A DNA stretch of 64,000 nucleotides from the NCBI GenBank assembly GCA_965655095.1, contig OZ296651.1:20646001-20710000 (forward strand). The letters are read 5' to 3'. This document shows, one piece after another, positions 38,501-60,359 of the stretch (its first letter is position 1; each line of letters opens with the position of its first letter). A program made the position numbers and the translations under genes. The notes under the pieces are model-generated. The model was not told the origin of the DNA. It made no database searches and saw only the letters and a list, made by a program, of their open reading frames with translations. The stretch is from Haplodiscus bocki. Lineage: Eukaryota.

Positions 38501-41433
38501 CACTTTGGAGTTAGCTAAGACTACACAAATGCCAAGTGTGTATGAATGGTTGTGCAGCCTGATAGCCTGTATCATCATTTTCCCTTCTGTCAATTTGACT
38601 CGTGTTGGTGAGAACAAAAGCGCTTTTCTCTCAATTGACGGTGTTGCCAATACGGCGTTATTCCTAGGAGTGTGGGTAACTTCATCTCCGACGGGTACAT
38701 CCACTTTCTGGATTCTGGAACGGCGGTACCACTGTCTTCTGTGTTGTCTGTAAAACCTAAAAACTATTCAGATACTTGTCTTTCGTTTTTTTAGGGACTC
38801 GCATCGAAGTGTCCGGAAGGTGTAGTAAATGATTTCTTAAGTCAAGAGTTACAAAATAGGTTTTAAAAAATAACTTTCCTGTCAGTACCATACCCATTGT
38901 TGGTAGTCACAGGAAAGTTTCTTCAAAGCTACATACTGCCAAAGAAAACGTGATAAAACTTGTTTCTTAACTTTGACTAAGCTACCGCATCAAGATGACT
39001 TTCAAACTCGGGGCTGGCATTTCCCGTAGTAACGCTTCTGTGTCTGCAGTCGTTTTTTTGAAGTTCCGATTCTAACATTGCACTTTGGACTGCTCCGGTG
39101 TCCAAAAGTCCGTTAGTTTTGTGCATTTTAAAACAGAGAGGGGCATACAACATTTTATGCTTTTTAACAAATTATAGTGTCGGGCTAAGGACTTTAAAAT
39201 GTTGTGGGAGTCTTGTTTTGTTCTTATTCATGGAACCGAAATCAAACGTGATACTATGTTTGGTTTTCGGATGAAAACCGATGAAGTCTGTCGTCGTTGT
39301 GTTTGTCGTGTCTGGAGTCCGTGTTGGCCGCTGGTTGGTTGGCGTGTCGTCATCAGTTTTGCCAAGCTGATGAAATGTGATGCCGTCCTGGATCAGCTCG
39401 TGAGACAATGCGTTGTATCGGTTAACCATCTGTGGCTTTTGAACGGAGTTGTTGCTTGGCCGTCATCTAGAGTTTGCATGTTGGCCAGTTGTCTCGCGTT
39501 GTCTGCTTTCTCCGCTGATGGTGGTCTGGTCATTGTTGGTCGTCTGTAGATTTGGCCGTCTGTTCAATCAGTCGTCGCCCATCCGTTATGTCGTCGGCAA
39601 AAGATGCGGTTTATTCAGTTTAAAGAATCATTGTCATCATACTCCTATTTGTACTCGGGTGGGCCATGAAACCCACAGTCTTCCGTATACTGTTTGATTT
39701 CAGTACCTTTTTGTTATCCCCTGATCTCTCGTCTGTGGTTTGGCCTTTCGTTTTATGTTTGTTTCTCATACGGTATCTGGCGGTATGCTGAAATTTTTTT
39801 CTGTCGCTGGTTGCCGTATTTGCCGGAGTGTCCGGTGCACCCACAGATCTGGCATACTAACTTTGGAATTTAATGAGAGCCGTCCTCTGTCTTCTGTTGC
39901 CGTTCTCTAGTGATGACGGTTCCATTCTCTACATCACGGTCTCTCTGCTGCTGGCATTTTGCTTGCCTGTGACCAACCATGTTGTCACAGTAGAAGTACT
40001 TCCTTTCAAACTTTTTTGTGTGTTTGGCGTTTTGCGGTTGTGGCTTTGTCTTCGGTTTTCCATCGTTGTCGCCTAAGAGAAAGGATGAGGCATTGCTACT
40101 TGGGTAAACCAGCTACACTGTTGGAGTCTCTGCAGGAAAACGTTTTTTCGCTTCTAGTGTTCTCCTTGCTGCTCTTAAGAAAATTGCGCTGGATTGAGAT
40201 CCCGAGATTGCCGAAGATAAACGTCTCGATGTATTCTTCGGCGTTATCTTGAAGCGTTTGTTCGGCGTTAACTTTCAATGGCTTGAGGAAGTCTGGAAAA
40301 ATTTTTGCTGTGAGATTGTATTTTGCTTGGTCTCATTTGTAGCTTGCGACTTCCTTGAGGTCATTTTTTGTGGAATTTTTTCGAAACTTTGTCAACATCT
40401 CCTTCAGTGTGGTCTCCGTGGTGATAGTAGGCGATTGGTGAAATAGGATTGCTTCCTTTCTGAGAAGACTCTGAAAGTACTGGAGCTTCGTTTCTTCTGT
40501 GGATCTGTTATTCATCAGGCGCAAATGGTTAACTCCGTAAAGTTGTTTTTTGCTCCTCTGAACGTTGCTACTTGCGTCTGAAACAATGTGGGATTGTTCG
40601 TTTTTATTTGGCTGGGTAATGTTGTAATGGCGTTGAGTAAGTGTTCATACGTGTCAGTCAATTCGGAAGTGGTTCGCTGTCGAAATTGTCTCTCATACTC
40701 GTTGTACGTTTTTTCGCCGCTAGTATTGGGGCTGGTCATCGATTGTCGTCTGTTTCGGGTTCGGGTGCCTCCTGTCACCGTGTCGGACTGATTGTGGCTA
40801 TACCAGAAGTGGTACCAAACGTCAGTCCTCAGATGCGGTGTCGTCACCATTTTTTGCACCAAGCTAGTCAGTTCCTCCAGCTGGCGGTTTAGGGGAGCAA
40901 AAATTCCTTTAATTCGCTCGTTGAATGCATCTTGGGTCAACGTCTGAATCTCGGAAACTTCTTCATGACTTTGACTGACGATTTTCCGACTACGTCTTCT
41001 TCGGAACCATTCTTACTCTTTGCGTGCTCTCTAGATGTGTTGTACCGTTTACCGTTTCTAAGACCTCTGTTTTCTTCGGAATCAAGCATTCAGGTAGCAA
41101 AACTTGAAGTCATTGATGATTCTGTATCCAGCGGGTAGATTATATGCGAGTAAGTTTACAAAGTACGCAAAACATTGAAATTTGTAGTTAGAGTTGATGC
41201 AAGCTATATGGCGCCCATTGTGCTATTAGCACTGTGTAATGCACGTTGTCGCTCTGGCAAACCTGAGCTGAACTACTGAATGCGCATAATTTGCGTTGGT
41301 GGACCTGCGTTGTCACGAGACCGATGATAAGACAAATTCTCAGCATCGGCATGTTCTCATTGGCTCTTCTGCTTTATCAGTATTTAATCATTTAGAGTGT
41401 GAAACCCAATTCTACCGCAACCATGGGGCTACA
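35571..41433 (-). mobile_element. Degenerate Ty3/Gypsy LTR retrotransposon (gag-PR-RT-RH-IN); 3' end lost at the gap
   Basis: Minus-strand motifs in Gypsy order: protease GLLDTGAVQS (~39100); RT IRFLVDLRRLN (~37940), KLDCSQAYHY (~37820), RLAQGL and HHVDNMG (decayed YVDD, ~37625); RNase H MYDASEHAAGYVL (~37185) and EKFLAMHLVFDKFRHILWG; integrase LLEIDLLGPL...LTALDVFSRY (~35930-36010). Gag-like fragments at ~39600-40900. Many stops and frameshifts. Confidence 0.92.
41219..41433 (-). repeat. Candidate 5' LTR (~215 bp) followed by a putative primer-binding site
   Basis: The minus strand begins TGTAGCC and ends TAGCACA, followed after 1 nt by TGGGCGCCA (PBS-like TGG start). The second LTR is not visible, so this is unconfirmed. 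Confidence 0.4.
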
Positions 41434-43094
41434 TACATATACCAACGTAATTGAGCAATTTTGTTGCAACAAGTTTGCATAAGTTCACTATGGCGGATTG
41501 TAGCTAATCTATCTTTCACAAACGTCAAACATTTGCTAAAAATGAAAATTCAGGTATTAGCGCATTCCCTACTGCATTTGTATTGTTTTCATTGTTAATC
41601 CACGTTACCTTCAATCTGTTTCAGTTTTCCCTGATATTATTCATTTCGTCTATATCTACTCGTACTATTCAATGCTTAAACGCTGCTAGCTCATAGCTTG
41701 AATGAGTTCCGATATAATTTAAGCAAGCACGTGTCATAGCTCTAGCACAGTTCATGAAACTTTGAGTTGGGTCAATGCTGCATCGTATCGATAGATAATG
41801 ATAAAAAGTATTCTTTTTAGCAAAAACTGTTATCAATAAATAACGTTGAGTTGAGTCACGGCTTTCACCCTGTTGATGAAAAAAGATGTACTTGGAACAA
41901 TCTGGCGGTCTATATGGGAAATTTTTATCGTTTGGATGAAAACTGACGAAAAATTAAAGTACTGTTAAATGGCACAGTCATATATTTACACGGTTCGAAG
42001 ATAAATCGATGGGTTTCGTTTTGTCTTTTAGTCCGTTCCGCTGTTACTTTTAGGCTTAAGAACGTCGATAAATATTCTTTGCTCCATGATATTCTATTTT
42101 GCGATATGTTAGGAACAAATTAAGGAGGGGAAACATCATTCTGATGTTTTCCGATGAAAGTGTAATCTAGCTCTTTCAGTGTCCTATTGGTCTGGTCGCT
42201 ACAGATGGCATTTTTAGTGGCTGAGGATGATCCGGTTGGAGCATTCCGGTGTATTCTAAGTTACTTCTAGTAACGTTGAGATTTCATCGTAATCTGTCTT
42301 TTTCGTCGAAATGTCCTGCGCATTGGTTTTGGATGGATAGCGATGCTTTTATGTGCTCAGCGATATTTTTTCCATAATACATATTGATGTTTACCTAATA
42401 CATAAATCGCGTTCATATAGAGGGGAAGGGAAGTAATAGAACATAAATTCATTTATACCTCTGTGCGTGTCTTGGCTACCGAAATTGCATTAAGATCTTA
42501 GTAATGATAATGACTTCATACATTTAAAACATACCGTATGTTTAGGGACATGTAGATTTCTCATATTTCCCTTATGCGGGCATGACCTTCGTATACTTTC
42601 TGATGACGTCAAAATTTCAAGTTGTTGGCAACTTTGAAAAAAAGCGTCAAGGTTGCCGGGAATTAAGCGGTAGGATTTCAGAAACTGAAAAATAGCAAAT
42701 AGTAAACTCATAACACCGATTTGACAAAAATCAGAGTTGGCCAAATTCAGTAGAAAATTCCAGTGCGTCGAACATTGAAGGCTCCAATTGTCCGGAGATT
42801 TCGGCTTTTCAAATGAACAATTTGCAATTTTTCGACGCTTTGAGAATTATCATTTTTTCGACGCGATGTGTAGTCAATAATTTGAAAAAAGGGAAGATGC
42901 GCATGAAAATGATAAACTTGACAACATTGAATCCAATATTGTACTGGATTCATGTATTTATAGACTGTGCTTGCATGCTTTAAAACACTCTGGAGCAATT
43001 TTTTCTATTAATTAGTCTGCTTTTATTTTATTTTATTTTACCGCGGCATTCTACCAATTCATTAGAAGACATTGCTGTCTGGTTCACAACTTCA

Positions 43095-43184
43095 GGTACC
43101 TTTTTGGCTTAGCGGTCAATATCTTTGGGAATCACCGTAGTTCAGTTACTACGAAGACCCAGGTTCGAGTCCCAGAAACTGCCA
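43095..43184 (+). pseudogene. tRNA-like sequence (pseudo-tRNA or tRNA-derived SINE head)
   Basis: A box TGGCTTAGCGG (43105-43115), B box GGTTCGAGTCC (43162-43172), internal hairpin cgtagt-tcagtt-actacg, 3' aactgcca. The acceptor stem pairs poorly. Confidence 0.55.
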
Positions 43185-44809
43185 GATAAACTTTCAAACA
43201 CCGATGTTCTATTCATTAGTTTTTGATTTTATTTTCACTTCTATAAAATATAAAACTGGTACTTTTTTGTATTTTCAATTATTTGGAGTGAAGCTTCAAA
43301 ATTTAGCCGATATCATTTTTCACATTATTCACTCCATGATAGTTTGCGTCACTCTTCATGTAGAAAACATCTGGTCATGCTTTCTGAATACTGCCTCGAA
43401 TTTTCCCGATTTCTCAGCAGCTATTGTCGCTAAATATTTCTGTTTAAAATTGACCCTGAAACCAACTCAAAGAATGAGGTTCTGCAACAGCGGGAAATAC
43501 TTCTAGGATAATCTCAACACTTAAACTTCGATTTTTAAATCAAGACTCAGCAGCTTCAATTCGTTATAAAACTCTAACTTTAGTCAACTTCTAAATATAA
43601 AGGCCCCATATGTGGGTTCTGAATAACTTCAATTGTTACATAGCAATTCCATGACCTTGGAATAAAATTTATGCAAACGACGGTTTCAAAACGCGGAACT
43701 TTTGTGACACTCCCGTACCCCAACTTTTGCATGAGCTCTCAGCGTACTTCAGTGACGGGCATCTAAATTAAAATCAATGGTATCATTCAAACGATCTTTC
43801 AAATCTTTAAGCTATTTTTCATGAAAATACTTGGTTAAATGATTTTATAAATTTTCGCCCAGAATTTCATAATTGCAAATCATTCGTTCAATTTTCAGAT
43901 ATTTTACATCAAATTTGCCAATTGCACGCGGGAACAAAAAGGGGCATAAAAATATTTCACAAATTTCAAACAAATTTGTCGTAGAATGTGTCGTGGTCTT
44001 TCTCAAAACATAGTTTTTGTTGCCAAAATTTCAGTTTTTTTGCAAAAATATCGATTTTCGAAGCAGTTTTGATTTTTTCCGTTTGAATTACGGCATTATA
44101 ACGTTTCTTCCGTAATTTGGAAGGCGGAAATATACTCGAGCTAGCAGGGCGTCTTGTTTTCCTTTAAATAAATTATCAGCAATTTTTGCGATTGAAGAAA
44201 GAACCTGAAGGTATTCGAGCCTTGGAAATCAATGGTACATTTAACCCATTATACGGCAAAAAAATAACAACAGTAGTAGTTGTAAAGTTCAATTTTCACG
44301 GGGGAGGTTGAGTGAGTAACCAAATATGGTCTTTTACTCAACCCACCCCGAGCCAAAAATTATTACGTAGTCGCGAGAGGATAGACTACAATGACGTAAC
44401 CGACAGGTCAATCTGGTTATTTGTTTGGCGTGCAGCACACAAGTTGTAGGGCAATTCCGAGTGATTGTGAATGTCGACATCGAGAAGCAACAATGGCGTC
44501 ACCATTAAAACTGAATTATAGAATCCTTTCCGAATATGGAGTTATCATAAGATTTTACCGGCCGACAGTGACGACACGTAATCGAAAAAACCTGAATTAT
44601 GGCAATTCACTCCTCAGCGAATGCTCTTGACATCATCGAAGCTCGACCACAACCGGAAAACTCTGAGACTTATTCAAAACTCAGAGCGGAAATTTTTGTA
44701 AACAAATTTCCGAAACCATTCCGAAAAATACTCGCATGTCTTACAACGCTACCAAGTTAACACTTGAACAGCTATTCGACCTTTTTGCAGCTGCTATGAT
44801 GGGTCTCCG

Positions 44810-47665
44810 ATCTTTTTCGGCATTTGAAGATTGCAAAGGGAAAAATCGGAAACAACAAAGACAGGCAAAAAAAACTATAACAATTGGAAACTTTCAATCT
44901 GAGAAACTCCTCTTTCTAGAGTTTATTTTTGCAGATAGATTGAAAATTCAGTAAATTTTTGCAGCACATGTGAAGTTCTTGACAATTTTGGCACTGTGAA
45001 TTTCTACAAATGCAAAAGAGGAATCTGCAAAGACAATTATTTTTTTGTTCCAGTTTCTGAGTTTTGACTCGGATATTTCGAAGCAGAGAGTTCAATTTTG
45101 CTGGGAAAAGGAATCTCTATTTGTCAATCTGAGAGAAACTACTTTTTCTGAAGTTATCGGCATGGTGAGACATGATCAAGAATTTAAACATCAGTAAGGA
45201 AATGGAGACAACTTACTGCGGTTTCAACGTTTATATGTAGCGAACAAAAATGTGTTTAATAGTGTTCAACATTACTGCTATTTAGAACTTCCATATAGCA
45301 GTCTCAAAAACTGTATCAATTCCGGGCTTTCCGGCACTGTGAGAATGGAAGGGAAAAAATAGATGCGTATAGGTTGGAACAATTCGTTGCAATTTGAAAA
45401 AATCAGTGTTCGTAATCTACTTTATACTGTTCACTCTCTCTGTTAATTCGATTCCTTATTGGCAAGTCTGAGGCACTGTGAAACAATTCGAAAACTTCTG
45501 AACTGTGACAATTGAACAGAACATTTTGAAAGAGGCAAAGCAATGAAAATTTTTGTCGGAAATTTGACGATTTGAACGTCCGGATCCAAAATTGGAGAGT
45601 TCAAAAGTGCTGAAGAGTGCAATTTCTGCTGACAAATTTAAAGTTTTGTAATCTTTTGCCGTTTTCGGCATTGTGAGACTTGATCGAAAAATATAAAATG
45701 AGCAAGGGATTGAAAAGAAAACTGTTTAATACTTGAACAAATAAACGTAGAGAATTTTTATATTAGTGTTTGATTTTCCTGAGAAAAGAACCTCGATAAA
45801 ACTTTTTGAGGAACTGTAACACGTCCGGCCTTTTTGACATTGCCAACTTCAAGGGAAATTTCAAAGCTAACAGAATGTTAGAAAATCCTAATACATTTTG
45901 AAAATTTCACGTGAAAAAATTTCACAGAAAGTGTAATCGCTGATGGTTACTCTTAAAATGTATTTCTGAAGAGTTTCGAAGCTTCTAACAATTTCGGCAC
46001 TCTGGATTTTATTTGAAAAGTTTCAACAAGTTAAAAAATGGCAAAATTGCAACAATCTAAAAGTTTAGATGTGGGTAATTGATCCACAAAATTGATGCTG
46101 CTCATTAGAAACTCGGTTTAGGTACCTTCGACACTACTACCTTTCAAAAATTTTCGGCACTGTGAGTTTGAATAGACAACTATAAAGAGAGCAAAAAATC
46201 CAGAACACCTATTGCAATTTGATTTTTTTGTTGGTGAAGGTTTTTGAAGTGTATGTAGGTATGCTAATGGCGACAAATGGAAGTTTTAGTGAAACCTATG
46301 AGGAACTGTAAAACTTTTTGACAGTTTTGGAACTGTAAGTTTCGATGGATAGAAAAGGTTCGAATGAACACAAAAATTTGCCACAACATGAAAGTTTACG
46401 GGCGGGGCACCTAAATCATACCGTTCAATTTTATGCAGGAGGCGAATCAATACGTAAAAGAGAAACTTCAACGTTTCCTGCACGTTCGGCACTGTGGAAC
46501 TATTTGGACAAAAACAACGAAAGCTATATTTTGAGACAATAGATTGAATTTTGAAATTTTGGAGGTACAGCTTTTACGCAGTGTTTGTTATCGCTTATAA
46601 CTAGCACATTTATTGGAAAAATCAAAACGATATAAAATTTGCAAATTTTTCGGAACTGTGCGAGTCGTTTGAAAAAGTTCGATGGGGCAAAACTTGAAAA
46701 ATTGTCGCAACTTGAAAGTTTTGACGTAAAAATCTTGAATCATAAAGTTTAATTTTGTTGGTCAATAGAAACTGCTGAAAATTCTGTGAAAATGTTACAA
46801 TTTTGAAGCTTTCGACAACATGAGACTTGGTGGGGAAAAAGGAAGAGAGCAAGATATTGAAGAAATCTATTTGAACTAGAAAACTTCAACTAGAAGACTT
46901 GATCCATAGCCTTTGTTACTGCTGATAAATGGAGTCTATATTGGCGTTCCTGAGGAGTTCTGAGGTTACGCACATTTTTGGCAGTCTGGGTTTGTTTGAA
47001 ACTTTTCATCAAGGTAAAAAAATTGGAAAAAAGTGCTTTAAATTGAAAAATGAAACGTAACAATCTTGTTTCGTAGAGTTCAGTTTTAATGCTCACGAGA
47101 AATTTTGTTCATTGACTTTTGGAACTTTTGTGTTTCTGGAGTTTTTGACACCCTGAGACTTGATGACAGAATACAAAGACATCGAGAAATTGAGAAAACC
47201 AATTCCTACTTGAAAATTTTGTAAGAAGCCTGCTTCATAGTGTCTGATGCTGCTGCTATCCAGAGTTTTTACGACCAATTCAGCGAAAATGTATTATATA
47301 CCGCAACTCCAGCTTTGTATGACTTGTGTGAAAGATTTGGACGCAGCAAAAACACAGATGAAAATTGGTACAATTTGGAAGTTCAAATATGGGGAAGCAA
47401 CTTATCTAATACAGAATAAAAATGTTCAACATTACAAGCTCTTTGAACAAACTTGATAATTTGAATTTTTTTTGGAATTTTCAGCCCCATGACAATAATA
47501 CTCGGTGGAGAATTCTAAAAAGAGCAAACAAAAGATATAACGTGTCTCAGTGTGAAGATATCAGTTTGAGAGTTTGGCTATAGTTTTCTCAAATTTTTAT
47601 TGAAAAGATTTTCTTCAAACAATAGTGAGAAAAAGTAGCAATGCCAACATTTCCGCCACGGTCAG
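44810..47665 (+). repeat. Highly degenerate ~166-bp tandem repeat inside the arm (mirrored at ~54560-57330)
   Basis: A ttcggcactgtgaga-like motif occurs at 44817, 44988, 45157, 45331, 45498, 45665, 45834, 45994, 46154, 46327, 46486, 46650, 46812, 46978 and 47145 (mean spacing ~166 bp), with weaker copies to ~47650. Confidence 0.75.
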
Positions 47666-49497
47666 TTTCCAAAGAGCAATCCACAAGATGGTAAAACAAG
47701 TGCAGTTCACGGTAACAACTTCAATCTGCTGCAATTGATAAATGTTGTGACAACTGCTTTATTCAAAGTGTTTAATTTTTACACCGACAGATGAGAAACA
47801 GTGAATTCTGAGACAATTTTCTCTAAGAGAAATTGAAAAGTTTCTGAATAAAGTGAAACCCAGAGTGCCTTCGAGAGAACTAACTTGCTTTCAAGAAAGT
47901 TTTTTCATTCTTCTTGTACATGAAATTGTCATAGGTTTCAGTAAAAGATTGATGTGTGCATGTCTGAAAACTCCAAAAGTATAAGAGTTGCTCGGAAAAA
48001 ACCTAACAAAGACTAACGCTTAACTTTCTTTCTTTTCATCAAAAAAGTTTCACCTCAACCTATAAAATTGGTTTACAACTGTAAGAACCGAGTAGACCTC
48101 TCTATGTGCAATTGCAGATTAGAGCGTTTTTTGTCATTCTCTGCAGTTTGTTTCATGCTCGGAAAGTCGCAAAAAGACGTAAGTTTATGTTTTCTTGTAA
48201 GTTTTTGTTTTTGTTCAAAAAACTGAAACTTTTGTGCTAAAGCAAAAACTGAAGGAAACTTTCATGCAGAAATTGAAAAAACGAAATTTTCGCAAAACTA
48301 TGTTCAGTGTCAGGTTATATGATTTTCTCTTATCGTGGTAGTTGAGGAACAAATTAATTTGCCCAGACTAGCTTTATGCAGAGTAGTAAGAGCTGATTTT
48401 GTTTTGAGCTCGAAAAAGGTAGTCAGTATGTTTACTGAAGTCAAACTTCTGCAAAGCTCCACTCTCGGAAACTGAAACTCTAGGTTTCAAAAGAATCGAT
48501 GGCAATTTATAGCCACTTTTTTCACCAACTCTCTCTGTCAGACGAGAAAGAATAAAGTGTTTTAAGCTTCTTTCTGGCACCCTCAGAAACATTGAAGAAG
48601 TTGTATGTCCTCATCAGGAGTTTTGATAAAAAATTTCGTGAAATCTGTTGGAGTTGGTAGAAGTGCAAGTTCTTGCGTGTCAGCGAAGTCCCCGTGGTAA
48701 GTTTTTCGTTAAAAGTTTTGGTTTAACTCGTGACACCAAGCCGACAGAGGTCGCAGTTGTTCTCAGTCATGACTTTTGTGTGTCAACCAAGTAGAAAGCT
48801 CCTTTACTTCATGAAAATTTGAGCAGCTTGGAAAAGTGAGAACAGGAAGATCAACTGCTCTGCTTCTGACAGCGTAGAGACAACATCTAGACAAGCATTA
48901 ATTGCATATACATAGTGTGGTACTTGGATCATGATGGAACAGCTGAAACCACCGAAAGTGTTGGATTGAATCATCAAGAATAACAAAGATTTAAAATTTT
49001 CTGAAAAGGTCCTCAGAAGAGTGCTTTTGGAAAATTCCGCTGCAACGAAATGTCAGAAAGCTACAAAAAATGAATAATAGTCTGAAGTTTTGATGAACAT
49101 ATTTCGTCTAAAAACTGCAGAAGCAGAAAAAATATTGGTTTCAACAGGTGTCAGCGTTGTCTCGCATTAGAAAACACATTGGCGAGAAAACGACATCCAT
49201 CAAATTTTTTCACATTAGCTGGAGTTATTCGTTCAGGAATTAGTTTTTAATCCGTATGTGATCATCCCAGACAAGAACAATTTATCTGGTGATAGTCACA
49301 GCTGGATTTTTTCTGACAAGCGTTCATTTGATTCAGTTGAAATTTTTCAGCGCATATGAAATGAAAAAAATCATGAATAGTTTCAATTCTTTCAAAATTG
49401 TTCTCGAGAGGGGCAAGTTTTCCAGAAAAACGGAAAGAAAGAGTTCCTCTGAATCAGGATTTGTGACCTGTGAAGCGTTTAACGCCGAAATGGAAAC

Positions 49498-49499
<2 letters not shown>

Positions 49500-49530
<31 letters not shown>
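49500..49530. repeat. (GT)n microsatellite at the inner end of the left arm
   Basis: About 15 GT units seen directly. Confidence 0.95.
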
Positions 49531-49532
<2 letters not shown>

Positions 49533-52500
49533 GCTGCGGAATAATCAACTAGATGTGAACGTAGTTAAGAAAGTCATAAGTTTTCGTGAAATTTCGAAAC
49601 TTTCACCTTTCATCGAAACTACAAATGACCGATCCAATCAAAACAGTCATTCGAAGTTGTGCTCTTTTTTCGATCTCCAGAGTTTTGATGTGACTTTTCA
49701 TAGCTCTAAAGTCACTTTGATTACGCTTATGGTTACAAAACCTGACAATTTTGCAGCAGCGATGAAAGTATTTGCTGCCACACTATCACCACTGACTTGA
49801 TTATAAAGCGAAAACTACACAAATTCAGGTAGGAACAATTTGAAGAAATTAAAACGTGCCTAGAAATTGGTTTGCAAACATTGAATTCTGTTCAAGTTCA
49901 GCATGAGAACGACTCCAGTTCCATCTTAAGCTCCCCAAATCCCAACGGGTGGTGATGAAAAATCAATTTTTTCAAAATGAAATCAATTAACTGCAGGATA
50001 GGTGAAAATGAAACATCACGAGGTGAATTAAATATTGTTCAAGAAAAATTCTTGGCAAATGTAACATTGGGGAACTTCCGTTGTTGATCAAACGGTTCCC
50101 TTTCGCAACTTTCAAAGTCCCAGGTTTTGAATTCTGTCTAGATGAGTTTTGTATTTTTGAAAGATGACAACATCGCATTTTCGGTGAAAACAGAAAAATC
50201 TGGGAAAACGGATAAGTAGGTTGGAGGAGAAATTTCGCAAAGAATCAACTTCCGGAAAAGAATGCGACTGAGCAATGTATTACAAAACGAAGCGACGAAA
50301 CAGCAACAAGGATGGAATGGAAAAATGAATAGAGAATTCAACCAAAAATAGTACAATTCCGGTCATCCAATCACAAGAAGCCAGCGGAGATGTCCATCAA
50401 GTGGCGTTGTTAGCAGTACAAAAAACATAGACATATTGGATAGAATTCTTTGCGAGTAAGGCTGTCAACATGCAAAGGAAAAAAGACAAAGCAAGTCTGC
50501 TCCAACGTTTTCTGCAGCATTTGTACGAAGGAATAAAATCTTTGAAATGTGAACGCCTCGTGACAACAATCTGAAAAAATTATGGAATAATTACTATCTT
50601 TGATAAAGTCAGACTTTTTAGCAGTCGACAACACCCAGTCAAAGCTGCAGAAAAATTCTATTCTCTGTGATTTTCGTAACACTCTGGTCTAGATAAGTCC
50701 AAAGGGTGACCCATTGTATCTGAGACTTTTTCTCTAAGAGTGCGATATCGGTGAACACTTCGCCAGAATTTGTTTAGCTTCAAGTCCACGATTTTTTGAA
50801 GGTACTCTACCGTGGATTTTTCAGTCAGCCATGGAAGTGAGTTGTAGCAATCAAGATGTACCAGCAGACAAAAGGCCACAAAAAAATTTTCCGAGCAAGC
50901 ACAACATTAAATGTTTCCAGAAACTGTCGTCAAAATGTAGTTGTTGGCCAGTTCATGTCACACATGTTCGTTCAACGACTTTTCCTTTCTTTGCATGGAA
51001 TGAATTTTTTCCCTAAAGCAACATTATAAAAACAAAACTTTCTTTACCAAATTCAGCGAAACAAACCTGATTGTTGCAGTTTTGTCCTTTTCGGCAATTT
51101 TCTATTGTATTGGTGTGCAGTAAGCATATATGATAATGGACCGTCCCTACGTTGAAATTTGAATCAAGTGGAAGCTACTATAATTTTGTCCCACCTGTTA
51201 AAAACTGCTTTTTATTTTCACACAGTGTGTGAGAACAACCAGCGGACAAACTGCAAACAAACCAAATGTTTTTGAACGGAAGACTTTCAGCTTCTCAACT
51301 TACAATGTTAAACTCGATACAATTGACTTCTTTCCAATGATACTTTTTGCGTTCATTGAACGAAACGACTGAGTTAATTTTCTTACATTAGTCACCGATT
51401 ATTTTTTTGAATGAGGGGAAATTCAAATCATATTTGTTTTCTTTGTCATTGGCAAACCTTTTATAAAATAGAAGAATCTTTTAAAGAAGAAAAGATGACA
51501 ATTTGTTCTTCTTGTGAACGATCAGTGAACCCACACTCAGTTCAAAAAGATCAACCATTTCAAAATCATTTATGTTTGTAAAACTAATACACAAGCGAAC
51601 CACTGCAGTTACGAAAACAGGTCAGTATCGAATTTCGAAAAACTTAAAGTTCAGTTTCGGAAAAGTAAATTGCATATCAGCCATTGCTCTGCCAAAGGAA
51701 CATTATCAACTTGAACTTTAGCTGAGCAATGCCAACACTGGTAATTCTACTCTTGATTACTGTTTCTCCGATGATATCCACACTTCCTTTTTGTGCCAAC
51801 AAGACGGCATTCACGTTTTGGACAAAACATATCACCAATTACGTCCACTGATAAATCAGGGACAGGCTTTTGGAATTTCTTCTTTTTTCTTTCGTCTTTT
51901 GTTTTGATAACAAGAAACGGTCACCCAATCAGCAAAAGTTGAGTAAAATGAAGTTTTAGTTTTTCGCTGAAAACGATGTCATGAACTAATTTTTAATCGG
52001 CGAGGGCGAAACTGAACACTTTCCGAAGACAAAACTGGGAGCATGTCCTACAGCAAAATTCCAAAACTAGTAATTGACCGAAAACAACCTGAGGAATGAA
52101 ATGTTTCTGTAGAAACTAAGAGGTTCCATGACCTTTTTCTCACCAAGCAAGAACGGAGCTCAAGTTTTTTTCAGCTACTGTTTGTTGATTGACTAAAGTA
52201 GAAGGAAAAAACCTGCGAAACATCACCGTGAGTTGAATCGTTTTGTTGGTGAATTTGGTCAATACACATGCTCGGGTGGAAAACGATCGAAATAGAAAAA
52301 ACTGTGAACGAAAATTGACACACCAATAGGTATTTGACAATAAATTTTATACGTCCTCTTGGTTAAAAAGTGGGTGATGCAACATTGAAAACCTTCTCCA
52401 GGTTTTTTGAGCAATTGATGATACATAGTTTGTGAAAAACAAATCGAATGATTTTCAATTTTAAAAAAACTAATATCACCCAAGCAAACATTCAGCTTAC

Positions 52501-52560
52501 ATATTTAAAGACTTCCAGAGAAGATGAACGAAGGCTGGCAATTTCTCTAGTGAGGGTCAG

Positions 52561-52598
52561 CACACACACACACACTCTCTCTCTCTCTCTCTCTCTCT
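52561..52598. repeat. (CA)n(CT)n compound microsatellite at the inner end of the right arm
   Basis: Seen directly. Confidence 0.95.
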
Positions 52599-55500
52599 AC
52601 TTTTCTTACTCGCCCNNNNNNNNNNNNNNNNNNNNNNNNNNNNNNNNNNNNNNNNNNNNNNNNNNNNNNNNNNNNNNNNNNNNNNNNNNNNNNNNNNNNN
52701 NNNNNNNNNNNNNNNNNNNNNNNNNNNNNNNNNNNNNNNNNNNNNNNNNNNNNNNAAGGCTTCACAGGTCACGAAACCTGCTTCGAAGGAACTCTTTTCG
52801 TATCTCTTGAAAACTTGCCCCTCTCGAGAACAATTTGGAAAGAATTGACACTGTTTGGGATTTTTTTCATTTCGTATTCGTTGAAAAATGTCAACTGAGT
52901 CAAACGAACGCTTCCCAGAAAAAATCCAGCTGTGACTATCTCCAGTTGAATTGTTCTTGTCTAGGATGACCACATACGGATTGAAATCTATTTCTTGAAC
53001 GGATAACTTGACCTATTTTGAAAAAGTTTCATAGGTGTCATTTTCTCCCCTTTGTGTTTTCCAATGCAAAACAACGCTGACACGTGTTGATACCAGTACT
53101 TTTTTGCTTCTGCAGTTTTTAGATGAGATACCTTCATCAAAACTTCAGGCTACACTATTTTTTTGTACTTTTCTGACAATTCGTTGCAGCATAATGTCAA
53201 AAATACTTTTTTCAGGACCTTCTCAAAAAATTACAAATCTTTGTTATACTTGATTATTCAATCGAACACTTTCGGGAGTTTCAACTGTTCCATCATTTTC
53301 CAAGAACCACGCTATTTTTATGCATTCAATGTTTGTCTACATGGTGGCTACGTTCTCAGAAGCAGAGCAGTTCATCCTCCTGTAATCACTTCTGCAAGTG
53401 GCTCAACTCTTCATGACGGTAAAGGAGCCTTATACTTGGTTGACATACAAAACTCCTCACTGAGAACAACTGCGACCTCTGTCGGCCTAGTGTCACGGGC
53501 TACACCAAAATTATTTATGGAAAACTTACCATGGGGACTTCGCTGACATGCAAGAATTTGCACTACTACCAACTCCGACAGATTTTATGAATTTTTTTAT
53601 CGAAGCCATTGTTGAGTGCAAACAACTTTTTCATAGTTTTCTGAGGATGCCAGAAAGATGCTTAAAACAGTTTATTCTTTCTGGTCTGACAGAAAGAGTT
53701 GGTGATAATAGTTTATATTTTGCCATCGATTCTTCTGAACCCTAGAGTTTCAGTTTTGGAGAGTGGAGCTATGCAGAAGTTTGACTTCAGTAAACATAGT
53801 GACTACCTTTTTCGAGCTCAAAACAAAATCAGCTCTTACTACTATGTATAAAGCTGGTCTGGGCAAAGTTTTATTGTTCCTCAATGCCACGATAGGAGAA
53901 GTGCATATAACCTGACACTGAGCATAGTTTTGCGAGAAATTCGTTTTTTCAATTTCTGCAAGAAAGTTTCCTTCAGTTATTGCTTTAGCACAAAAGTTTC
54001 ACTTTTTTGAACAAACACAAAAACTTACAGAAAAAACATAAACTTACGTCTTTTTGCGATTTTCCGAGCATGAAACAAGCTGCAGAGAATGACGAAAAAC
54101 GCTCTAATCTGCAATTGCACATAGAGAGCTATACTCGGTTCCTACAGTTGTAAGCCAATTTTATAGGTTGAGGTGAAAGTTTTTTGATCAAAAGAAAGAA
54201 AGTTAAGCGTTAGTCTTTGTTAAGTTTTTTCCGAGCAACTCTTATACTTTTGGAGTTTTCAGACATTCACACATCAATCTTTTACTGAAACCTGTGACAA
54301 TTTCATTTACAAGAAGAATGAAAAAACTTTCTTGAAAGCAAGGTATTTTTCCGGAAGGCACTCTGGGTTTCATTTTATTCAGAAATGTTTCATCTTTTTT
54401 CCAGAAAATTGTCTCAGAACTCACTGTTTCTCATCTGTCGCTGCATATATCAAACACTCTAAATAAAGCAATTGTCACAACACTTATCAATTGCAGCAGA
54501 TTGAATTTGTTACCGTTAACTGCACTTGTTTTACATCTTGTGGATTGCTCACTGGAAACTGACCGTGGCGGAAATGCTGGCATTGTTGCTTTTTCTCACT
54601 ATTGTTTGAAGAAACTCTTTTCAAGAGAAATTTAAGAAAACTATAGGCAAACTCTCAAATTGATATCTTCACACTGAGACACGTTATATCATTTGTTTGC
54701 TGTTTTTAGAGTTCTCCACCAAGTGTCAATGTCATGGTGCTGAAAATTCCAAAAATGTTTCAAAATATTAAGTTTGTTCAAAGAGCTTGTAATGTTGAAC
54801 ATTTTTTTTTCTGTATTAGATAAGTTGCTTCCCCATATTTAAACTTCCAAATTGTACCAATTTTCATCTGAATATTTTGCTGCGTCCAAATCTTTCAAAC
54901 AAGTCATACAAAGCTGGAGTTGCCGTATTTTATACACCTTCGCTGATTTGGTCGTACAAATTCTAGACAGCAGCAGCCATATCAGACACTATGAAGCAGG
55001 CTTCTTACAAGTTTTTCAAAGAAAAGTTGGTTTTCTCAACTTCTTGATGTCTTCGTATTCTCTCAACAAGTCTCAAGGTGTCAAAAACTCCAGAAACGTA
55101 AAAGTTCCAACATTCAGTGAACAAAATTTCTCGTGAGCATTAACACTGAATTCTACGAAGCAAGATTGTAACGTTACTTTTCTTAAATTAGTGCAGTTTC
55201 CATTTTTTATCTTGTTGAAAAGCTTCAAAACGTCCAAGTGTGCCAAAATTGTGCGTAACCTCGGAACTCATCAGAAACGCCAATAGAAACTCCATTTATC
55301 AGCAGTAACGAAAACTATGGATCAAGTCTTTTAGTTGAATTTTTCTATTTCAAATTGGTTTCTTTAATAACTTGCTTCCTTCATTTTTCCTCCCCAAGTC
55401 TCATGTTGCCGAAAGTTTCAAAATTGTAACATTTTCAAAGAATTTTCAGCAGTTTCTATTGACAAACAAAACTAAACTTTATGATTCAAGATTTTTACGT

Positions 55501-57757
55501 CAAAACTTTCAAGTTGCAACAGTTTTTGAAGTTTTGCCGTATCGAATTTTTTCAAACGAGCCGTATAGTGCCGAAAAAGTTGGATTTTGAACATTTTCTT
55601 GAAATTTCTTTTGAGGGTGCAAATTATCAACCAAACAAGCACGTCACGAACTGCTGTTCATTTCAAAATCAAGTTTCAATAGGTTCGCCAAATACGGCTC
55701 TAAATTTTTTTCTCCATGAAGTCTCACAATGCCGAAAGTGCAAAAAACGTTACGGTTTCTCTTAATTGTACAAATTCTACTCATCCATTAGATTGCACAC
55801 TCTGATTTCTGTTTTCTGCCAAAAAAGTTTCACGTTGTAGGTTTTTTTAACGTTTTTTGCCGAACGCGATTGATCCGTTGAGTCTCACAATTCCGAATCT
55901 GACGAAAACTTTGCAGTTTTTCATTGATTTCAATGAACATTCCATTCATCACCAATGATAAGCTTTTCAAAAACCTTCTCCAACGAAAAATTCAAATTGC
56001 AATAGGTCTTCTGGATTGGTTGCTTTCTTTAGTTTTCCATCGAGTCTCACATTTCCCAATGTTCGGGAAAGCTGATATTTTCTAAGATCTCTAAACCGAT
56101 TTTTTAATGAGCAGCATTAAACTTGTGAATCGATATCCGACGTGTAGACATTTAGATTGTGACAATTCTGCCTTTTTTCAACTTGTTCATACTTTTCAAA
56201 CGAGATCCACAGTGCCAAAATTGTCACAAAATTTGAACCTCAAAAAGTACTTTTGAAAGTTCTAGTGATTAGCGGTTAAAAAAGCTGTGAAAGTTGTTCA
56301 AATCAAGTTATAAAGATGCAATAGATTATATCGTTAAGTTGCTGGCCTCTTATCTTCCCATCAAATCTCAGAGTGTTAGAAAGGCGGAAGGTGTTACAAT
56401 TCCCTGGAAAGCTTTTAGAGAAGCTCATTACATTAGGATGATTGAAGACTAATGAACAATTTCTCTCTTGTTGGTTTCATATTTTTGATCATGTCTCAAA
56501 GGCCGGAAACAACGGAAATGAGAAAATTTTTTACATTTGTAAGCGGGAATTCTACTGTCCAGCATTTTGAGTTCTCTAAATTAAGATCCGTACGTTTAAG
56601 TTGTCAGAATTCTAACGGGTAATTTCAATCTTCTGCCTCTTTCAATCAAGTTCCACAGTGCTGAAAAAGTCGAAACAATTCATAGGCCCTCAGATTTGCC
56701 AGTGATAGTTCGTATTAACAGCAGGGTTGAACAGTAAAAAAAGATTCCGTCCATCGGTTTTTTCAATTTGCAATAAGTTATTTCAACCTACACCCATCAA
56801 ATTTTTTTCCCATCGAGTCTCAGAGTGTTGAAAGTGCCTCAAATGATACTATTTTCCGGACTGTTACAAGGAAGTCCTGAACATCAGTAAAATTGAACAC
56901 TATTGATCACATTTTAGTGCACTACATTTAAACTTTGGAACTCCATTATTTTTTTCTCCATTTCTGACTTTTTTCAAGTTTTTGAGCAAGTCTCACTGTG
57001 CCAAAAACTTCGGAAAAATCAGTTTCTCAGACTGATAAATAGAGCTTCCACTTTTCAGCAATATTGAACTATCTGATTCAAAACATCGAAGTTTCAACTC
57101 AAAAACTGGAACAAAAAAAACAATCTTTGCGAATTACTCATTTTAATCTGTCCAACTTCACAGTGTCGAAATTGTCAGAAACTTCACAGTTCTTCAGAAA
57201 ATCCGCTAAATGTTCAATCTACCTGAAATGATAAACACTCTAAAAGAAGTTCCTTACGTTGGACCTTTCCATTCGTTGTAGGCTTTTTTTGCTGATTTCA
57301 AATTTTCCTTTTGCAGTCTCGCAATGCCGAAGAAAGATTGGAGACCTATCATAGCAGCTGCAAATAGGACGAATAGCTTTTCATGAGTTAACTTGGTAGC
57401 TTTAATAAATATGCGATGATATTTCGCAATGGTTCAGGAATTTCGAGGATAAAATTTCCCGCTCTGATTTTTAAAAAGGTCTGAGTTTTCCGGCTTTTGT
57501 CGAGCTTCGATGATGTAAAGAGCAATCGCTGGGGAGGGAATTGCCACAATTCAAGTTTTTTCGATTGTTTCGTTGCTGTCGGACAGTAAAATCTTGTGAT
57601 AACTCCATATTCGGGAAGGATTTTGTAATTCAGTGGTAAACCTCGCGATTACGTAATTTTTGGCTCAGGGTGGGTTGAGTAAAATACCATATATGGTTAC
57701 TCACTCAACCCTCTTCCCTCCCCCCCCCCCAGCAAATTGACCTTCACAACTACTACT
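52561..57757 (-). repeat. Right arm of the giant inverted repeat (contains a 140-N gap at 52616-52755)
   Basis: Reverse complement of the left arm; starts with (CA)n(CT)n. Lacks ~115 bp present at ~44390-44505 and has a C-run expansion at ~57720. Confidence 0.93.
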
Positions 57758-59127
57758 TCCAAAACTAGGCATATACTATATTTGTTTAAACTAAAAGTCA
57801 GATTATTTGAGAATTATACCAAATTTGACAGTTCGTATAACTCTAAAAGGTAAAATGGTATAATTAATTGCCTCCTTTTTCATCGAAAATGTTTCAAGTT
57901 CCTGTTATTTCTGGCTAGTTCAAAGGATTGTTTCGTATCGTGCCGAGCTCTTATCGTGAAGTTTGTATTTTACATCATTCAACATTGGCTGATTCTTAGT
58001 GAAATGGGCTACCATTTCCAGTCGGTGTTTTACTTCATTAAAAATCCGCCAGAAGGCCCCAGTCGTCTAGAGAGTAGGACAAATAGTTTTTCAGACACAG
58101 ACTCTGTTTCGAGACTAGTAAGTCCAATTTTAGTCCAATACCACAAATTTATTTTCTCTGTATACTCCGAAACTCCTACCACGAAAAATTTTATGCTACT
58201 CCTTTATTATTTCCAGCCTTTGCGCGCAGCGCAACAACTTGTTTATATGACAATTACCTCTCATCAAATTTCCATTATCCGGTTATTCATTTTACTATTC
58301 TCAAGTTATACAAAAAAATAGTATATATGAACACTCTGATTTCTAGAGTCAAGAAGTTCAGCAGAAGTCTTAGAACGGATACATCTATGCATTATATACG
58401 ATCAACCTAATCCTCCTAAAAGCGATCTACACAAGGAGATATAGCCTAAAACCGGAACGATAGATGTGATTAGAAAATGGACACGATTGAAACTTTCAAT
58501 CCTTCTTAGGTTGCAGTTAATGAATAGTGGCCATATTTCAAACCATTGCGACATGTTCTTCAAGAAAGTCATTAGTTCAGACATTAATGGTATGTATATG
58601 CCTATGCATTTTTTTGTACATGAAAGCATTATGTTTGCTTTCTGTACTGGTTGTACTGAGTAATATATATCCTTTTTTGATGAAGCTTCTTCTCTTGCGA
58701 GTGCACGAAATGAATTGATTCTTCATTTTCGTCAAATACACGTTTTTGCATCAATTTAAGAACAGCAATTAGGTGAAATTTTGATGCAGTATTGTCAACT
58801 GGTACAAACAGTATAAGTTGTACTATTTAGAAGGGTAGTATGAGAAGTCAATTTGAATACAAAAATTGGGAGTCAAAAAATCATCAAACAACTTCGCACA
58901 GAAAACTGATGGCTAATTACAATACAGAATGATTATCTGGGTCAAGTCATCAAACAAGAAATTCAGAATTTATGCAAGAATATTATGTCACAAAACCTGA
59001 CTTTTTTTAAACATGAAAACGAAAAGAATAATTCAAACGATATGTGCAACATTTGATATTTTCTCCATATATTAGTACGTAATTGAAATTCATAATTTCA
59101 TAGCTGACAACAGTTTTGAAGATCAAA

Positions 59128-59316
59128 CTATTTGCGGATTGAGCACATCAAGAACTTGAAAAATTCCTCCATGAACGATTCGGGTTGATCTCGGTAGCAA
59201 GGGTGGCCAGCATTTTTGACTTCAAAGGTTTTGCTGTTTTTCAGCTTGCCCAAAACTTCTTTGGAGTGGAATCCCATGCCAGTGTCTTGCTCACCGTAAA
59301 TGACCAAGGTTGGAGT
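59128..59316 (-). CDS. ABHD14B: Terminal coding exon of an ABHD14-family alpha/beta hydrolase (ABHD14B-like)
   Basis: TPTLVIYGEQDTGMG...KLKNSKTFEVKNAGHPCYRDQPESF...FL matches the ABHD14 C-terminus (catalytic Asp and His; GxxD and AGHPCY). Acceptor ttctaacgttgcttcag has a CTAAC branch site; 189 nt, phase 0, stop TAG. ABHD14A vs ABHD14B orthology is not resolved. Confidence 0.88.
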   Translation of the reverse strand, partial: TPTLVIYGEQDTGMGFHSKEVLGKLKNSKTFEVKNAGHPCYRDQPESFMEEFFKFLMCSIRK

Positions 59317-60359
59317 CTGAAGCAACGTTAGAAAAAATAAGCACCCACATTCGACCTCGTACAAGAACAAGCTGGGTCAATATTTTTCAAAAGTTTTTGC
59401 ACAGCAAAGGTCAATCACTATTTTCGTTGGGGATTTTTGGTTTCCTGTTCTATTCTATTTAACTTTCTAATATCAACAAGATTACTTTGAAGAATGAAAT
59501 GTCTTGTTTCAACACATGCATACTCGGCATTGCTGGGGTTCGCATCCAAAAAAAACTGGGAATGAAAATATATTTTCCAATTATGCACGTTTCCAGTTAA
59601 GAAAAGTAAAGGAATAGTCGATGATTCCAAAAATACTCCCAAATAATTCGGAAATACAAAATGGATCTTTTCCGAAAATTATAAATTACTTGATACACTA
59701 TTTTGTATAGATCCGGTCAAATCAGAGCATTCAGCTGTAGTGGAAGTCATTTGCTAGACAAATTGCCGCCTCACATATTAAATTCGAATTTTCGTAACCT
59801 AACGCTGTCACTATTACGACGATCTTCATAAACTTGGAAATCGAAAGTTTAATTTCAAAAAGGTAGGCCCTAGCGGCGCTCGGATATCGGAGCACAAGAA
59901 GTTGAAACAGCATTCAGAGGTTAGCAAATGAAAAACATGGCATCCTTGCGTGTGAGGACGCTCTCTTTTGGTGCAAGAAAATCGATCCCATAATAATAAA
60001 AAAAAGCTTGAAACAATTGTAGAAGTAGGGATTTCGAACATGCATTTGAATTTAAAAAATGATTTAGAACACTGAACATTCAGAATATATATGGCGAAAC
60101 TGGTTATTTCGGCTTCTGAAATATGTTTTTTTAACCAAAATACCCAAAAAATTTGAAACGATTGCCAAAAAAATAAAAAGCTGACTGGCAAGACAAAAGA
60201 GCAAAAAGTTCCGGAAAAAGAAAAATCTATTTTTGGTCAATTCTAAAGCACTCACATGACCTCTATAGTAAGAGAATTAGAGAAATCCGTAGATTTGTCC
60301 AAAAGAAGTGTTTCTATATTGATTTGAAATGGACTAGTTGTTAGAAAGTTGATCTAGAT

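What the first reader, a model, noticed from the sequence alone, without database searches (positions are those of the whole stretch)
44272..57757. Gene-less 13.5-kb element with Polinton-type (AGT)3 ends and ~5.2-kb inverted arms: candidate giant non-autonomous Polinton or satellite of an endogenous virus
Seen: the termini are AGTAGTAGT...ACTACTACT, the arms mirror each other for ~5 kb around a 3-kb spacer, and no recognisable gene is present. Established: Polinton/Maverick TIRs start with AG-initiated short repeats used in protein-primed, slide-back replication, and are usually hundreds of bp to about 1 kb. Inference: about 78% of this element is TIR and its length approaches autonomous Polinton size. 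It may be a cis-only parasite that keeps origins plus stuffer DNA, replicated, integrated and perhaps packaged by a helper like the capsid-encoding family seen 9 kb to the left.
Basis: partly seen in the sequence, partly recalled or inferred. Interest (0 to 1): 0.8.

Follow-up and report, generated by a model that had tools for sequence, protein, structure and literature searches.

The report
Gene-less Maverick-ended element, giant inverted arms
A 13.5-kb stretch with no detectable genes carries the end signature of Maverick/Polinton virus-like transposons and consists mostly of two 5-kb inverted arms; it is a single old fossil, and nothing shows that it was ever copied by a helper.

Summary
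Window 44272-57757 begins with (AGT)3 and ends with (ACT)3. One BLAST match pairs 44272-49479 with 57757-52756 (about 81% identity) and stops exactly at those motifs. The arms end inward at the only two TG/CA microsatellites in the window, which mirror each other around a roughly 3.0-kb spacer. The right arm abuts the N run. An independent ENA contig confirms the left flank, left arm and spacer, and carries sequence past the N run's left edge; I did not read those letters.

No gene was found: no Pfam match, open-frame content as in random sequence, no codon periodicity in arm divergence, no protein relatives. The (AGT)n//(ACT)n ends match the published Maverick end motif, and the length falls in the Maverick range. 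The arms are 3.6 times the longest vertebrate Maverick terminal repeat.

There is no target-site duplication, no second copy, and no element sharing these ends in the window. Arm divergence is a mosaic (K2P 0.11 to 0.39), which a single duplication cannot explain. The capsid-like neighbour belongs to a family of more than 2,000 relatives but shares nothing with this element.

Best reading: a fossil non-coding derivative of a Maverick-type element. The "satellite of a helper virus" idea remains untested.

The parts
44272..57757 (.). Whole element, 13,486 bp: arm, spacer, inverted arm
   Evidence: BLASTN self-comparison ends exactly at these bases.
44272..44280 (+). Left terminal motif (AGT)3
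   Evidence: It matches the Maverick end motif described in PMC8097293.
57749..57757 (-). Right terminal motif, (ACT)3 on the + strand
44272..49479 (+). Left arm; probably runs on to the (TG)15 tract ending at 49530
   Evidence: Confirmed at 99.94% identity in an independent ENA contig.
52756..57757 (-). Right arm, the inverted copy of the left arm; its inner end abuts the N run
44299..44350 (+). Left subterminal palindrome (24-nt arms, 4-nt loop), 28-79 nt from the end. It is the best-conserved piece of the arms (94-95% identity).
   Evidence: (I22).
57667..57712 (-). Right subterminal palindrome, the counterpart of the left one
44392..44516 (+). 125-nt stretch present only in the left arm (the largest indel between the arms)
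49500..49530 (+). (TG)15 microsatellite at the inner end of the left arm
49531..52560 (.). Spacer, about 3.0 kb, unique in the window. No Pfam match and no excess of open frames.
   Evidence: Colinear with the ENA contig up to 52454.
52561..52598 (+). (CA)7(CT)12 microsatellite, the mirror partner of (TG)15, just left of the N run
52616..52755 (.). N run (140 letters, length uncertain), lying inside or at the inner edge of the right arm
   Evidence: Continuity was argued from the mirrored microsatellites and from coordinates of an independent contig. The letters were not looked up.

Best explanation
This is the fossil of a non-coding (non-autonomous) derivative of a Maverick/Polinton-type element. 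Shown: it has that class's terminal signature, (AGT)n at one end and (ACT)n at the other, sitting exactly at the limits of the inverted repeat. A conserved palindrome lies 28-79 nt inside each end. The length is at the low end of the Maverick range. No gene is detectable. Inferred: the giant arms arose when one end of a linear or broken copy was copied in inverted orientation onto the other end. Terminal-repeat homology anchored the copying on the outside, and it ended at a TG microsatellite on the inside. This is the layout of a copy-back defective genome (end, unique part, inverted copy of the same end). A polymerase and integrase supplied in trans would then have had to replicate and insert the product. 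Since then the locus has decayed. The arms have partly homogenised each other or been overwritten by relatives, which gives the mosaic divergence. It is inert today.
For: The inverted repeat stops exactly at AGTAGTAGT and ACTACTACT. An inverted duplication with arbitrary limits would hit one of the three published 6-nt Maverick end motifs about 7 times in 10,000 (my own estimate). The published end motif 5'-(AGT)2//(ACT)2-3' is linked there to slide-back in protein-primed replication (PMC8097293). The length of 13,486 bp compares with 12,723-24,620 bp for intact vertebrate Mavericks. Terminal repeats of about 2 kb, and polymerase-less derivatives that stayed mobile, are reported for insect polintons (bioRxiv 10.1101/2025.02.07.637071). 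The terminal 120 nt (K2P 0.11) and the subterminal palindrome (0.06) are much better conserved than the adjoining 2 kb (0.385; p about 1e-5 to 2e-6), as expected for cis-acting ends. Gene-lessness: 73 stop-to-stop pieces of at least 55 aa gave no Pfam match better than E 0.0097. Open-frame content equals a first-order Markov expectation, whereas the capsid-like block shows 19 long frames against 6.1 +/- 2.4 expected. Arm mismatches show no 3-base periodicity. No protein relatives were found, and no Rfam family or tRNA. The arms' inner limits are the only two TG/CA microsatellites in the window, mirrored. This points to one copying event rather than two independent truncations. Because the repeat does not run into flanking DNA, the terminus was either a physical end or an existing repeat boundary when the arms formed.
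Against: There is no target-site duplication: aacaac against tccaaa, 3 of 6 matching. By my own binomial estimate, a decayed duplication would look this bad with p about 0.09 at 19% divergence and about 0.22 at 30%, so this is weak evidence either way. Only one locus is known, and the single copy-number proxy found only the locus itself. No gene-bearing element with the same termini is in the window. Arms of 5.2 kb are 3.6 times the longest vertebrate Maverick repeat and 2.6 times the insect case. Arms copied from a gene-bearing parent should still show gene remnants at about 10% decay per arm, and they do not, so the parent's first 8 kb was itself non-coding or of unknown content. The mosaic divergence needs an extra assumption. 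The junction between spacer and right arm is hidden by the N run.
Confidence: 0.5

Rival explanations
1. The locus holds two separate, partial copies of one Maverick-ended family, lying tail to tail about 3 kb apart. Each keeps the same terminal 5.2 kb. There is no single 13.5-kb element.
For: No target-site duplication links the two outer flanks. Arm divergence is a mosaic with a sharp step at about 46.7 kb and well-conserved termini, as seen between members of different subfamilies. The region is a transposon-rich island inside satellite DNA, where nested and neighbouring insertions are common.
Against: Both copies would have to be truncated at the same homologous point, the mirrored TG/CA microsatellites, which are the only two in 64 kb. 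Neither arm has a second terminus at its inner end. Neither arm taken alone is flanked by a convincing duplication. No further copy or solo end lies in the window.
Confidence: 0.2
2. It is a non-autonomous member of a different or undescribed class of terminal-inverted-repeat transposon whose ends happen to begin with AGT repeats. A cut-and-paste transposase would mobilise it, not protein-primed replication.
For: No Maverick gene is present, so the assignment rests on 9 terminal bases and on size. A subterminal palindrome near each end would also suit a transposase binding site. Very long inverted arms are known in foldback-type elements (my own knowledge).
Against: The arms contain no tandem subrepeats, which are the hallmark of foldback arms. 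From my own knowledge, the end motifs of the described cut-and-paste superfamilies (hAT, CACTA, Mutator, PIF, piggyBac, Tc1/mariner, Ginger) do not fit. The base just outside AGT differs between the two ends, so a hAT-like CAG start is excluded. (AGT)n is a published Maverick end motif.
Confidence: 0.12
3. It is a host palindrome: an inverted segmental duplication in heterochromatin, unrelated to any mobile element, whose limits fall on AGT repeats by chance.
For: The locus lies between satellite arrays of opposite orientation. It has no genes, no target-site duplication and no second copy.
Against: Both limits of the repeat fall exactly on a 9-nt motif that is expected 0.27 times in the whole window. 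The ends are better conserved than the adjoining sequence. Homology does not extend into the flanks.
Confidence: 0.04
4. It is an assembly or scaffolding artefact: the right arm was placed or oriented wrongly at the N run, or a fold-back chimeric read created the palindrome.
For: The right arm starts at the first base after the N run. A short hairpin palindrome abuts the other N run of the window.
Against: The arms are only 81% identical, whereas fold-back artefacts are near-perfect. The mirrored microsatellites lie on opposite sides of the N run. An independent ENA contig of 171,694 bp is colinear with window 37236-52454 at 99.94% identity. A gene is called there that starts at the equivalent of 52448 and is 134 aa long, so that contig has no break at the N run's left edge.
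Confidence: 0.04

Closest known systems
Maverick/Polinton elements (polintoviruses), including polymerase-less derivatives and long-repeat forms in insects
   Same: Terminal motif (AGT)n//(ACT)n. Terminal inverted repeats. Overall length of 13.5 kb, within the reported 12.7-24.6 kb. Long repeats (about 2 kb) and mobile copies lacking the polymerase have been described.
   Different: No polymerase, integrase, capsid, ATPase or protease remnant. The arms are 5.2 kb against 46-1,447 bp in vertebrates and about 2 kb (gene-bearing) in butterflies. No 5-8-bp target-site duplication. Single decayed locus.
Copy-back (panhandle) defective viral genomes. From my own knowledge, not checked in a held paper: incomplete adenovirus genomes with long inverted terminal duplications.
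   Same: Layout of one genome end, a unique stretch, then an inverted copy of the same end, which gives two identical origins (definition in PMC13506859).
   Different: Those are extrachromosomal by-products of a known parent and carry parental gene fragments. Here the parent is unknown, the sequence is non-coding, and the unit is integrated and old.
Foldback (FB-type) transposons
   Same: Very long inverted arms around a short middle piece, often without genes (my own knowledge).
   Different: FB arms are built of tandem subrepeats. These arms have none, and FB ends are not AGT repeats.
Transpovirons and Tlr1-type elements
   Same: Linear or integrated elements with terminal inverted repeats that depend on another virus or element (PMC5499653).
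   Different: Both encode proteins (helicase and others). Transpovirons are about 7 kb and associate with giant viruses. No such genes are present here.

Membership tests
Maverick/Polinton | Conserved end motif, most often 5'-(AGT)2//(ACT)2-3', at the very termini | tested here: met
   (AGT)3 at 44272-44280 and (ACT)3 at 57749-57757, exactly at the limits of the repeat. The motif is as published in PMC8097293.
Maverick/Polinton | Terminal inverted repeats (reported 46-1,447 bp; 100-1,500 bp; about 2 kb in butterflies) | tested here: met
   Inverted arms are present but measure 5.0-5.2 kb, outside every reported range.
Maverick/Polinton | Target-site duplication of 6 bp (5-8 bp) | tested here: not met
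   The flanks are aacaac and tccaaa, and no 5-8-bp match exists in any register. Decay could have hidden one (my estimate, p about 0.09-0.22).
Maverick/Polinton | Encodes a protein-primed family B polymerase and a retroviral-type integrase (by definition; PMC5499653) | tested here: not met
   No Pfam match in 73 pieces of at least 55 aa, and no excess of open frames. It is therefore not a Polinton in the strict sense, at most a non-autonomous derivative.
Maverick/Polinton | Capsid morphogenesis module (major and minor capsid, ATPase, protease) | tested here: not met
   No similarity to the capsid-like gene of the neighbouring block.
Maverick/Polinton | Length about 13-25 kb | tested here: met
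   13,486 bp, against 12,723-24,620 bp.
Non-autonomous (cis-only) derivative of a mobile element | Shares its termini with an autonomous partner in the same genome | not testable with these tools
   The termini occur only at the element's own ends in the window.
Non-autonomous (cis-only) derivative of a mobile element | Several copies at different sites, each with its own target-site duplication | tested here: inconclusive
   A called 72-aa ORF of the left arm finds only its own locus among 5.8 billion proteins, and a 139-aa arm piece finds nothing. This is a weak proxy, because the ORFs are spurious and rarely called.
Foldback elements | Arms made of tandem subrepeats | tested here: not met
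   TRF at score 30 finds only short microsatellites in 44-58 kb. No direct repeats appear in the self-BLAST.
Copy-back defective genome | One end, a unique part, then an inverted copy of the same end | tested here: met
Copy-back defective genome | Derivable from an identified parental genome | not testable with these tools
   No parent is known, and the arms and spacer carry no gene remnant.
Fold-back assembly artefact | Near-identical arms, usually at a contig end | tested here: not met
   81% identity. The locus lies deep inside an independent 171.7-kb contig.

The most novel reading that the evidence does not exclude
The locus is an endogenised copy-back genome of a Maverick-type virus-like element: a gene-less molecule made almost entirely of duplicated origin-bearing ends plus filler. 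Its near-genome length would have let it be replicated, and perhaps packaged and integrated, entirely at a helper's expense. That would make it the first satellite-like, cis-only parasite described for this class.
Probability: 0.15. Interest if true: 0.7.

Novelty: new variant of a known kind. Interest (0 to 1): 0.4.

Why it matters
Mavericks/Polintons are thought to replicate as linear, protein-primed genomes, but direct traces of that stage are scarce. An integrated unit whose inverted repeat ends exactly at the slide-back motif, and whose layout is that of a copy-back product, would be a sequence-level trace of such an intermediate. It would also show that terminal repeats in this class can grow to 5 kb, and that wholly non-coding derivatives can reach genome size. 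As it stands this is one decayed locus with no target-site duplication and no known relatives. Its present value is as a lead for a genome-wide survey, not as a demonstrated new system.

Tried and rejected
Coding remnants: I ran Pfam on 73 element pieces and a piece-by-piece BLASTP of element pieces against all other pieces of the window. I also tested codon periodicity of arm mismatches and open-frame counts against Markov shuffles. All were negative.

Protein relatives of arm ORFs: the search found nothing, or only the locus itself. The length limits of that search and the spurious nature of the ORFs make this weak evidence.

RNA genes: none in Rfam, and no tRNA.

Tandem subrepeats and subterminal repeats: none beyond the palindrome.

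Spacer as a nested transposon: it has no terminal or long repeats of its own.

Capsid nature of the neighbouring family: no PDB sequence match, for a single protein or a profile. Two AlphaFold2 models were poor (pLDDT 36.6 and 50.4). Foldseek against BFVD and PDB gave nothing at E <= 0.001, so those matches are meaningless. Only the Pfam membership stands: a full-length relative scores 48.7 bits against a cut-off of 27. One paper also matches an adomavirus hexon to that Pfam family.

Host identity: not obtained. The ENA analysis accession appears in no held paper, and the sources give no names.

Right-of-gap anchor: 16 ORFs right of the N run were looked up, and none is in the protein collection. 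Colinearity of the independent contig beyond the N run could therefore not be checked by coordinates.

Papers not held: Kapitonov & Jurka 2006 and Daniell & Mullenbach 1978.

Rejected ideas: a hAT-like CAG start, because the outside bases differ between ends; RIP-like mutation, because transitions and transversions are about equal (466 and 486); a LINE with a microsatellite tail, because there is no reverse transcriptase and the ends are of Maverick type.
Full report
**1. Observation.** The window reads AGTAGTAGT at 44272-44280 and ACTACTACT at 57749-57757. The 9-mer occurs three times in 64 kb against 0.27 expected; the third, at 36701, lies inside an unrelated retroelement. A self-BLAST of the element gives only inverted matches: 44510-49479 against 57634-52756 (79.6% over 4,999 columns), and 44272-44377 against 57757-57642. 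A global alignment gives 81% identity, 952 mismatches and 41 gap events; the largest gap is a 125-nt stretch present only in the left arm. Homology stops at the first and last base of the terminal motifs and does not enter the flanks. The first 24 nt and the core of a subterminal palindrome occur nowhere else in the window. The described structure is therefore real and far beyond chance. The arms are old copies, not mirror images.

**2. The N run, tested first.** The right arm begins at the base after the N run (52616-52755), so the junction between spacer and right arm cannot be seen. No reading frame of interest crosses it. Two lines of evidence favour continuity.
- Twenty bases past the left arm's last aligned base lies (TG)15 (49500-49530), and just left of the N run lies (CA)7(CT)12 (52561-52598). 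These are the only TG/CA tracts of 7 or more units in the window, and they are mirror images in place and strand. The right arm therefore most likely continues through the N run to its own microsatellite. The spacer is then about 3,030 bp (49531-52560).
- An exact-protein look-up led to an ENA contig (ERZ26859043, ctg85089, 171,694 bp) that is colinear with window 37236-52454 at 99.94% identity. Its end coincides with the window's other N run (35371-35570). A gene called on it starts at the equivalent of 52448 and is 134 aa long, against 120 codons when the window is read through the N run. An independent assembly therefore has sequence, not a contig end, past the N run's left edge. The length of the N run may be inexact.

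I kept the fetched flank short of the N run and did not read or fetch its letters. Colinearity to the right of it remains an inference.

**3. Coding content.** Seventy-three stop-to-stop pieces of at least 55 aa gave no Pfam match better than E 0.0097, which is chance level for 73 queries. Counts and lengths of open frames in both arms and the spacer equal those of first-order Markov shuffles. The capsid-like block, used as a positive control, has 19 long frames against 6.1 +/- 2.4 expected. Mismatches between the arms show no three-base periodicity anywhere. Element pieces resemble no other piece of the window. A 139-aa arm piece has no relative, and a called 72-aa arm ORF finds only its own locus. 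There is no Rfam family and no tRNA. The translations read as low-complexity noise. Each arm is only about 10% away from the arms' common ancestor. Remnants of a polymerase or integrase would still be detectable, as the weak but real hits to the far more fragmented retroelement next door show. The arms were therefore non-coding when they were duplicated.

**4. Mosaic divergence (unexplained).** K2P distance between the arms varies by block:

| Block | K2P distance |
|---|---|
| terminal 120 nt | 0.11 |
| subterminal palindrome | 0.06 |
| 44801-46750 | 0.385 |
| 46751-48500 | 0.11 |
| 48501-49479 | 0.18 |

The change at about 46.7 kb is a step within about 100 nt (outer against inner block, p = 6e-48). 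Transitions and transversions are about equal (466 and 486). One duplication followed by uniform decay cannot give this pattern. Either the arms later converted each other over the inner block, or they descend from diverged relatives. The better conservation of the extreme ends fits cis-acting function during at least part of the divergence.

**5. Comparison with what is known.** Vertebrate Mavericks have conserved end motifs, most commonly 5'-(AGT)2//(ACT)2-3', which the authors tie to slide-back in protein-primed replication. [quoted passage not shown] Nematode work gives repeats of 100-1,500 bp and duplications of 5-8 bp. A recent preprint reports about 2-kb gene-bearing repeats and polymerase-less but still mobile polintons in butterflies. 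Polintons by definition encode the polymerase and integrase (PMC5499653). The element meets the end-motif, inverted-repeat and size criteria. It fails the gene criteria and the target-site duplication (aacaac against tccaaa). By my own estimate, decay could hide a duplication with p about 0.09-0.22, so its absence is only mildly negative. The element is not a Polinton in the strict sense. The best fit is a non-autonomous derivative with arms 2.6-3.6 times longer than any reported.

**6. The neighbour and the helper idea.** A low-GC block (about 28.1-35.4 kb, 28-30% GC) holds a gene at 33141-34427 (+) that is interrupted by one in-frame stop, with no frameshift between its two parts. Its parts were searched separately. 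The C-terminal part matches Pfam PF21738 (double jelly roll-like) below the cut-off. A full-length 430-aa relative matches above it, at 48.7 against 27 bits. The family is very large: 2,023 relatives among 90% clusters, the best 120 all from ENA at 74-88% identity, and 2,046 clusters at 50% identity, mostly fragments. One paper reports this Pfam family as the HHpred match of an adomavirus hexon. Structure prediction failed, so the capsid fold is not independently confirmed. Within the window the block shows no polymerase or integrase. The weak integrase-like match reported for the surroundings is not in the capsid-like block. I assign it, by elimination, to the adjacent retroelement on the minus strand, next to its weak RNase H and reverse-transcriptase matches. 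The block is cut by the first N run and has no AGT-type end at its satellite junction. It shares no DNA, termini or protein similarity with the 13.5-kb element, and its GC content differs. Nothing links the two beyond proximity.

**7. Mechanism.**
- *Shown:* two identical-type ends with a conserved palindrome, and arms that end outward at the terminus and inward at mirrored microsatellites.
- *Inferred:* one end was copied in inverted orientation onto the other, from the terminus inward to the microsatellite. This is the copy-back layout (definition in PMC13506859). From my own knowledge, incomplete adenovirus genomes with long inverted terminal duplications are the nearest protein-primed precedent.
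- *Reasoning:* the repeat does not run into host DNA, so the terminus was a physical end or an existing repeat boundary at that moment.
- *Unknown:* whether this happened in a free linear copy or during repair of an integrated copy, and whether the product was ever replicated or integrated by a helper.

**8. Rivals.**

| Reading | Confidence |
|---|---|
| Non-coding Maverick-type derivative (best explanation) | 0.5 |
| Two partial copies tail to tail | 0.2 |
| Another or undescribed inverted-repeat transposon class | 0.12 |
| Chance host palindrome | 0.04 |
| Assembly artefact | 0.04 |

The two-copy reading fits the missing duplication and the mosaic, but needs identical truncation points.

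**9. Steps left out, and a slip.** I did not scan public contig collections with the termini, and I did not look up contigs of the capsid-like family. The collections open to pattern scans also do not include the ENA assembly this locus matches, so the yield would have been low. I did not read the letters under the N run.

The slip: my notes 1 and 3, and several tool calls, carry the bounds of the two ORF pieces of the capsid-like gene. By implication these place its single stop. This report gives only the gene's outer bounds, and nothing was deleted.

**10. Verdict.** The finding is a real, unusual structure of Maverick type. It is a gene-less single fossil. The satellite-of-a-helper reading is possible but unsupported.

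Noticed in passing
window 1-28122 and 60358-61194: A satellite of about 114 bp (with higher-order periods of 231 and 336 bp) fills the first 28 kb. It reappears in inverted orientation at 60.4-61.2 kb, so the 32-kb transposon-rich island holding the element sits between satellite arrays of opposite orientation.
   Followed up: partly
window 33141-34427 (+), inside the low-GC block at about 28.1-35.4 kb: A capsid-like gene (Pfam PF21738, double jelly roll-like) is interrupted by one in-frame stop. It belongs to a family with more than 2,000 relatives, modal length 430 aa, with the closest all from ENA assemblies. The fold was not confirmed because the AlphaFold2 models were poor.
   Followed up: partly
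window 28970-29665 (-): An ORF with a C-terminal RING finger (zf-C3HC4_3, 29 bits) lies in the same low-GC block. It is the only tested ORF of that block present as an exact protein in the public collection, on ENA contig ctg85776 of 192,895 bp.
   Followed up: partly
window about 35.6-38.3 kb (-); GC 41-43% out to about 42 kb: A decayed retroelement pol lies on the minus strand. Weak matches to reverse transcriptase and RNase H fall on separate stop-to-stop pieces, so the pol frame is broken repeatedly; a weak integrase-like match in the surroundings probably belongs to it as well.
   Followed up: partly
window 35241-35370, abutting the N run 35371-35570: An AT-rich hairpin palindrome (63-nt arms, 90% complementary, 4-nt loop) sits at the very edge of the first N run. 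By coordinates, one independent ENA contig ends about 420 bp to the left of this N run and the other within about 15 bases of its right edge. This is either a fragile palindrome or a contig-end fold-back artefact.
   Followed up: partly
window 57758-60350: The right flank of the element has an excess of open frames: on the minus strand, 9 pieces of at least 55 aa against 4.0 +/- 1.7 expected, and a 155-aa piece on the plus strand. None has a Pfam match. It may be an unrecognised decayed gene or transposon.
   Followed up: no
window 35587-52454 against loci L003 and L004: The ENA metagenome-assembly contig matches the window at 99.93-99.94% identity, not 100%. The window therefore comes from a different assembly or haplotype of the same organism. 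The organism could not be identified.
   Followed up: partly
window about 46700: Arm-to-arm identity steps abruptly from about 57-71% to about 84-95% within about 100 nt. This looks like the edge of a conversion or recombination tract.
   Followed up: partly
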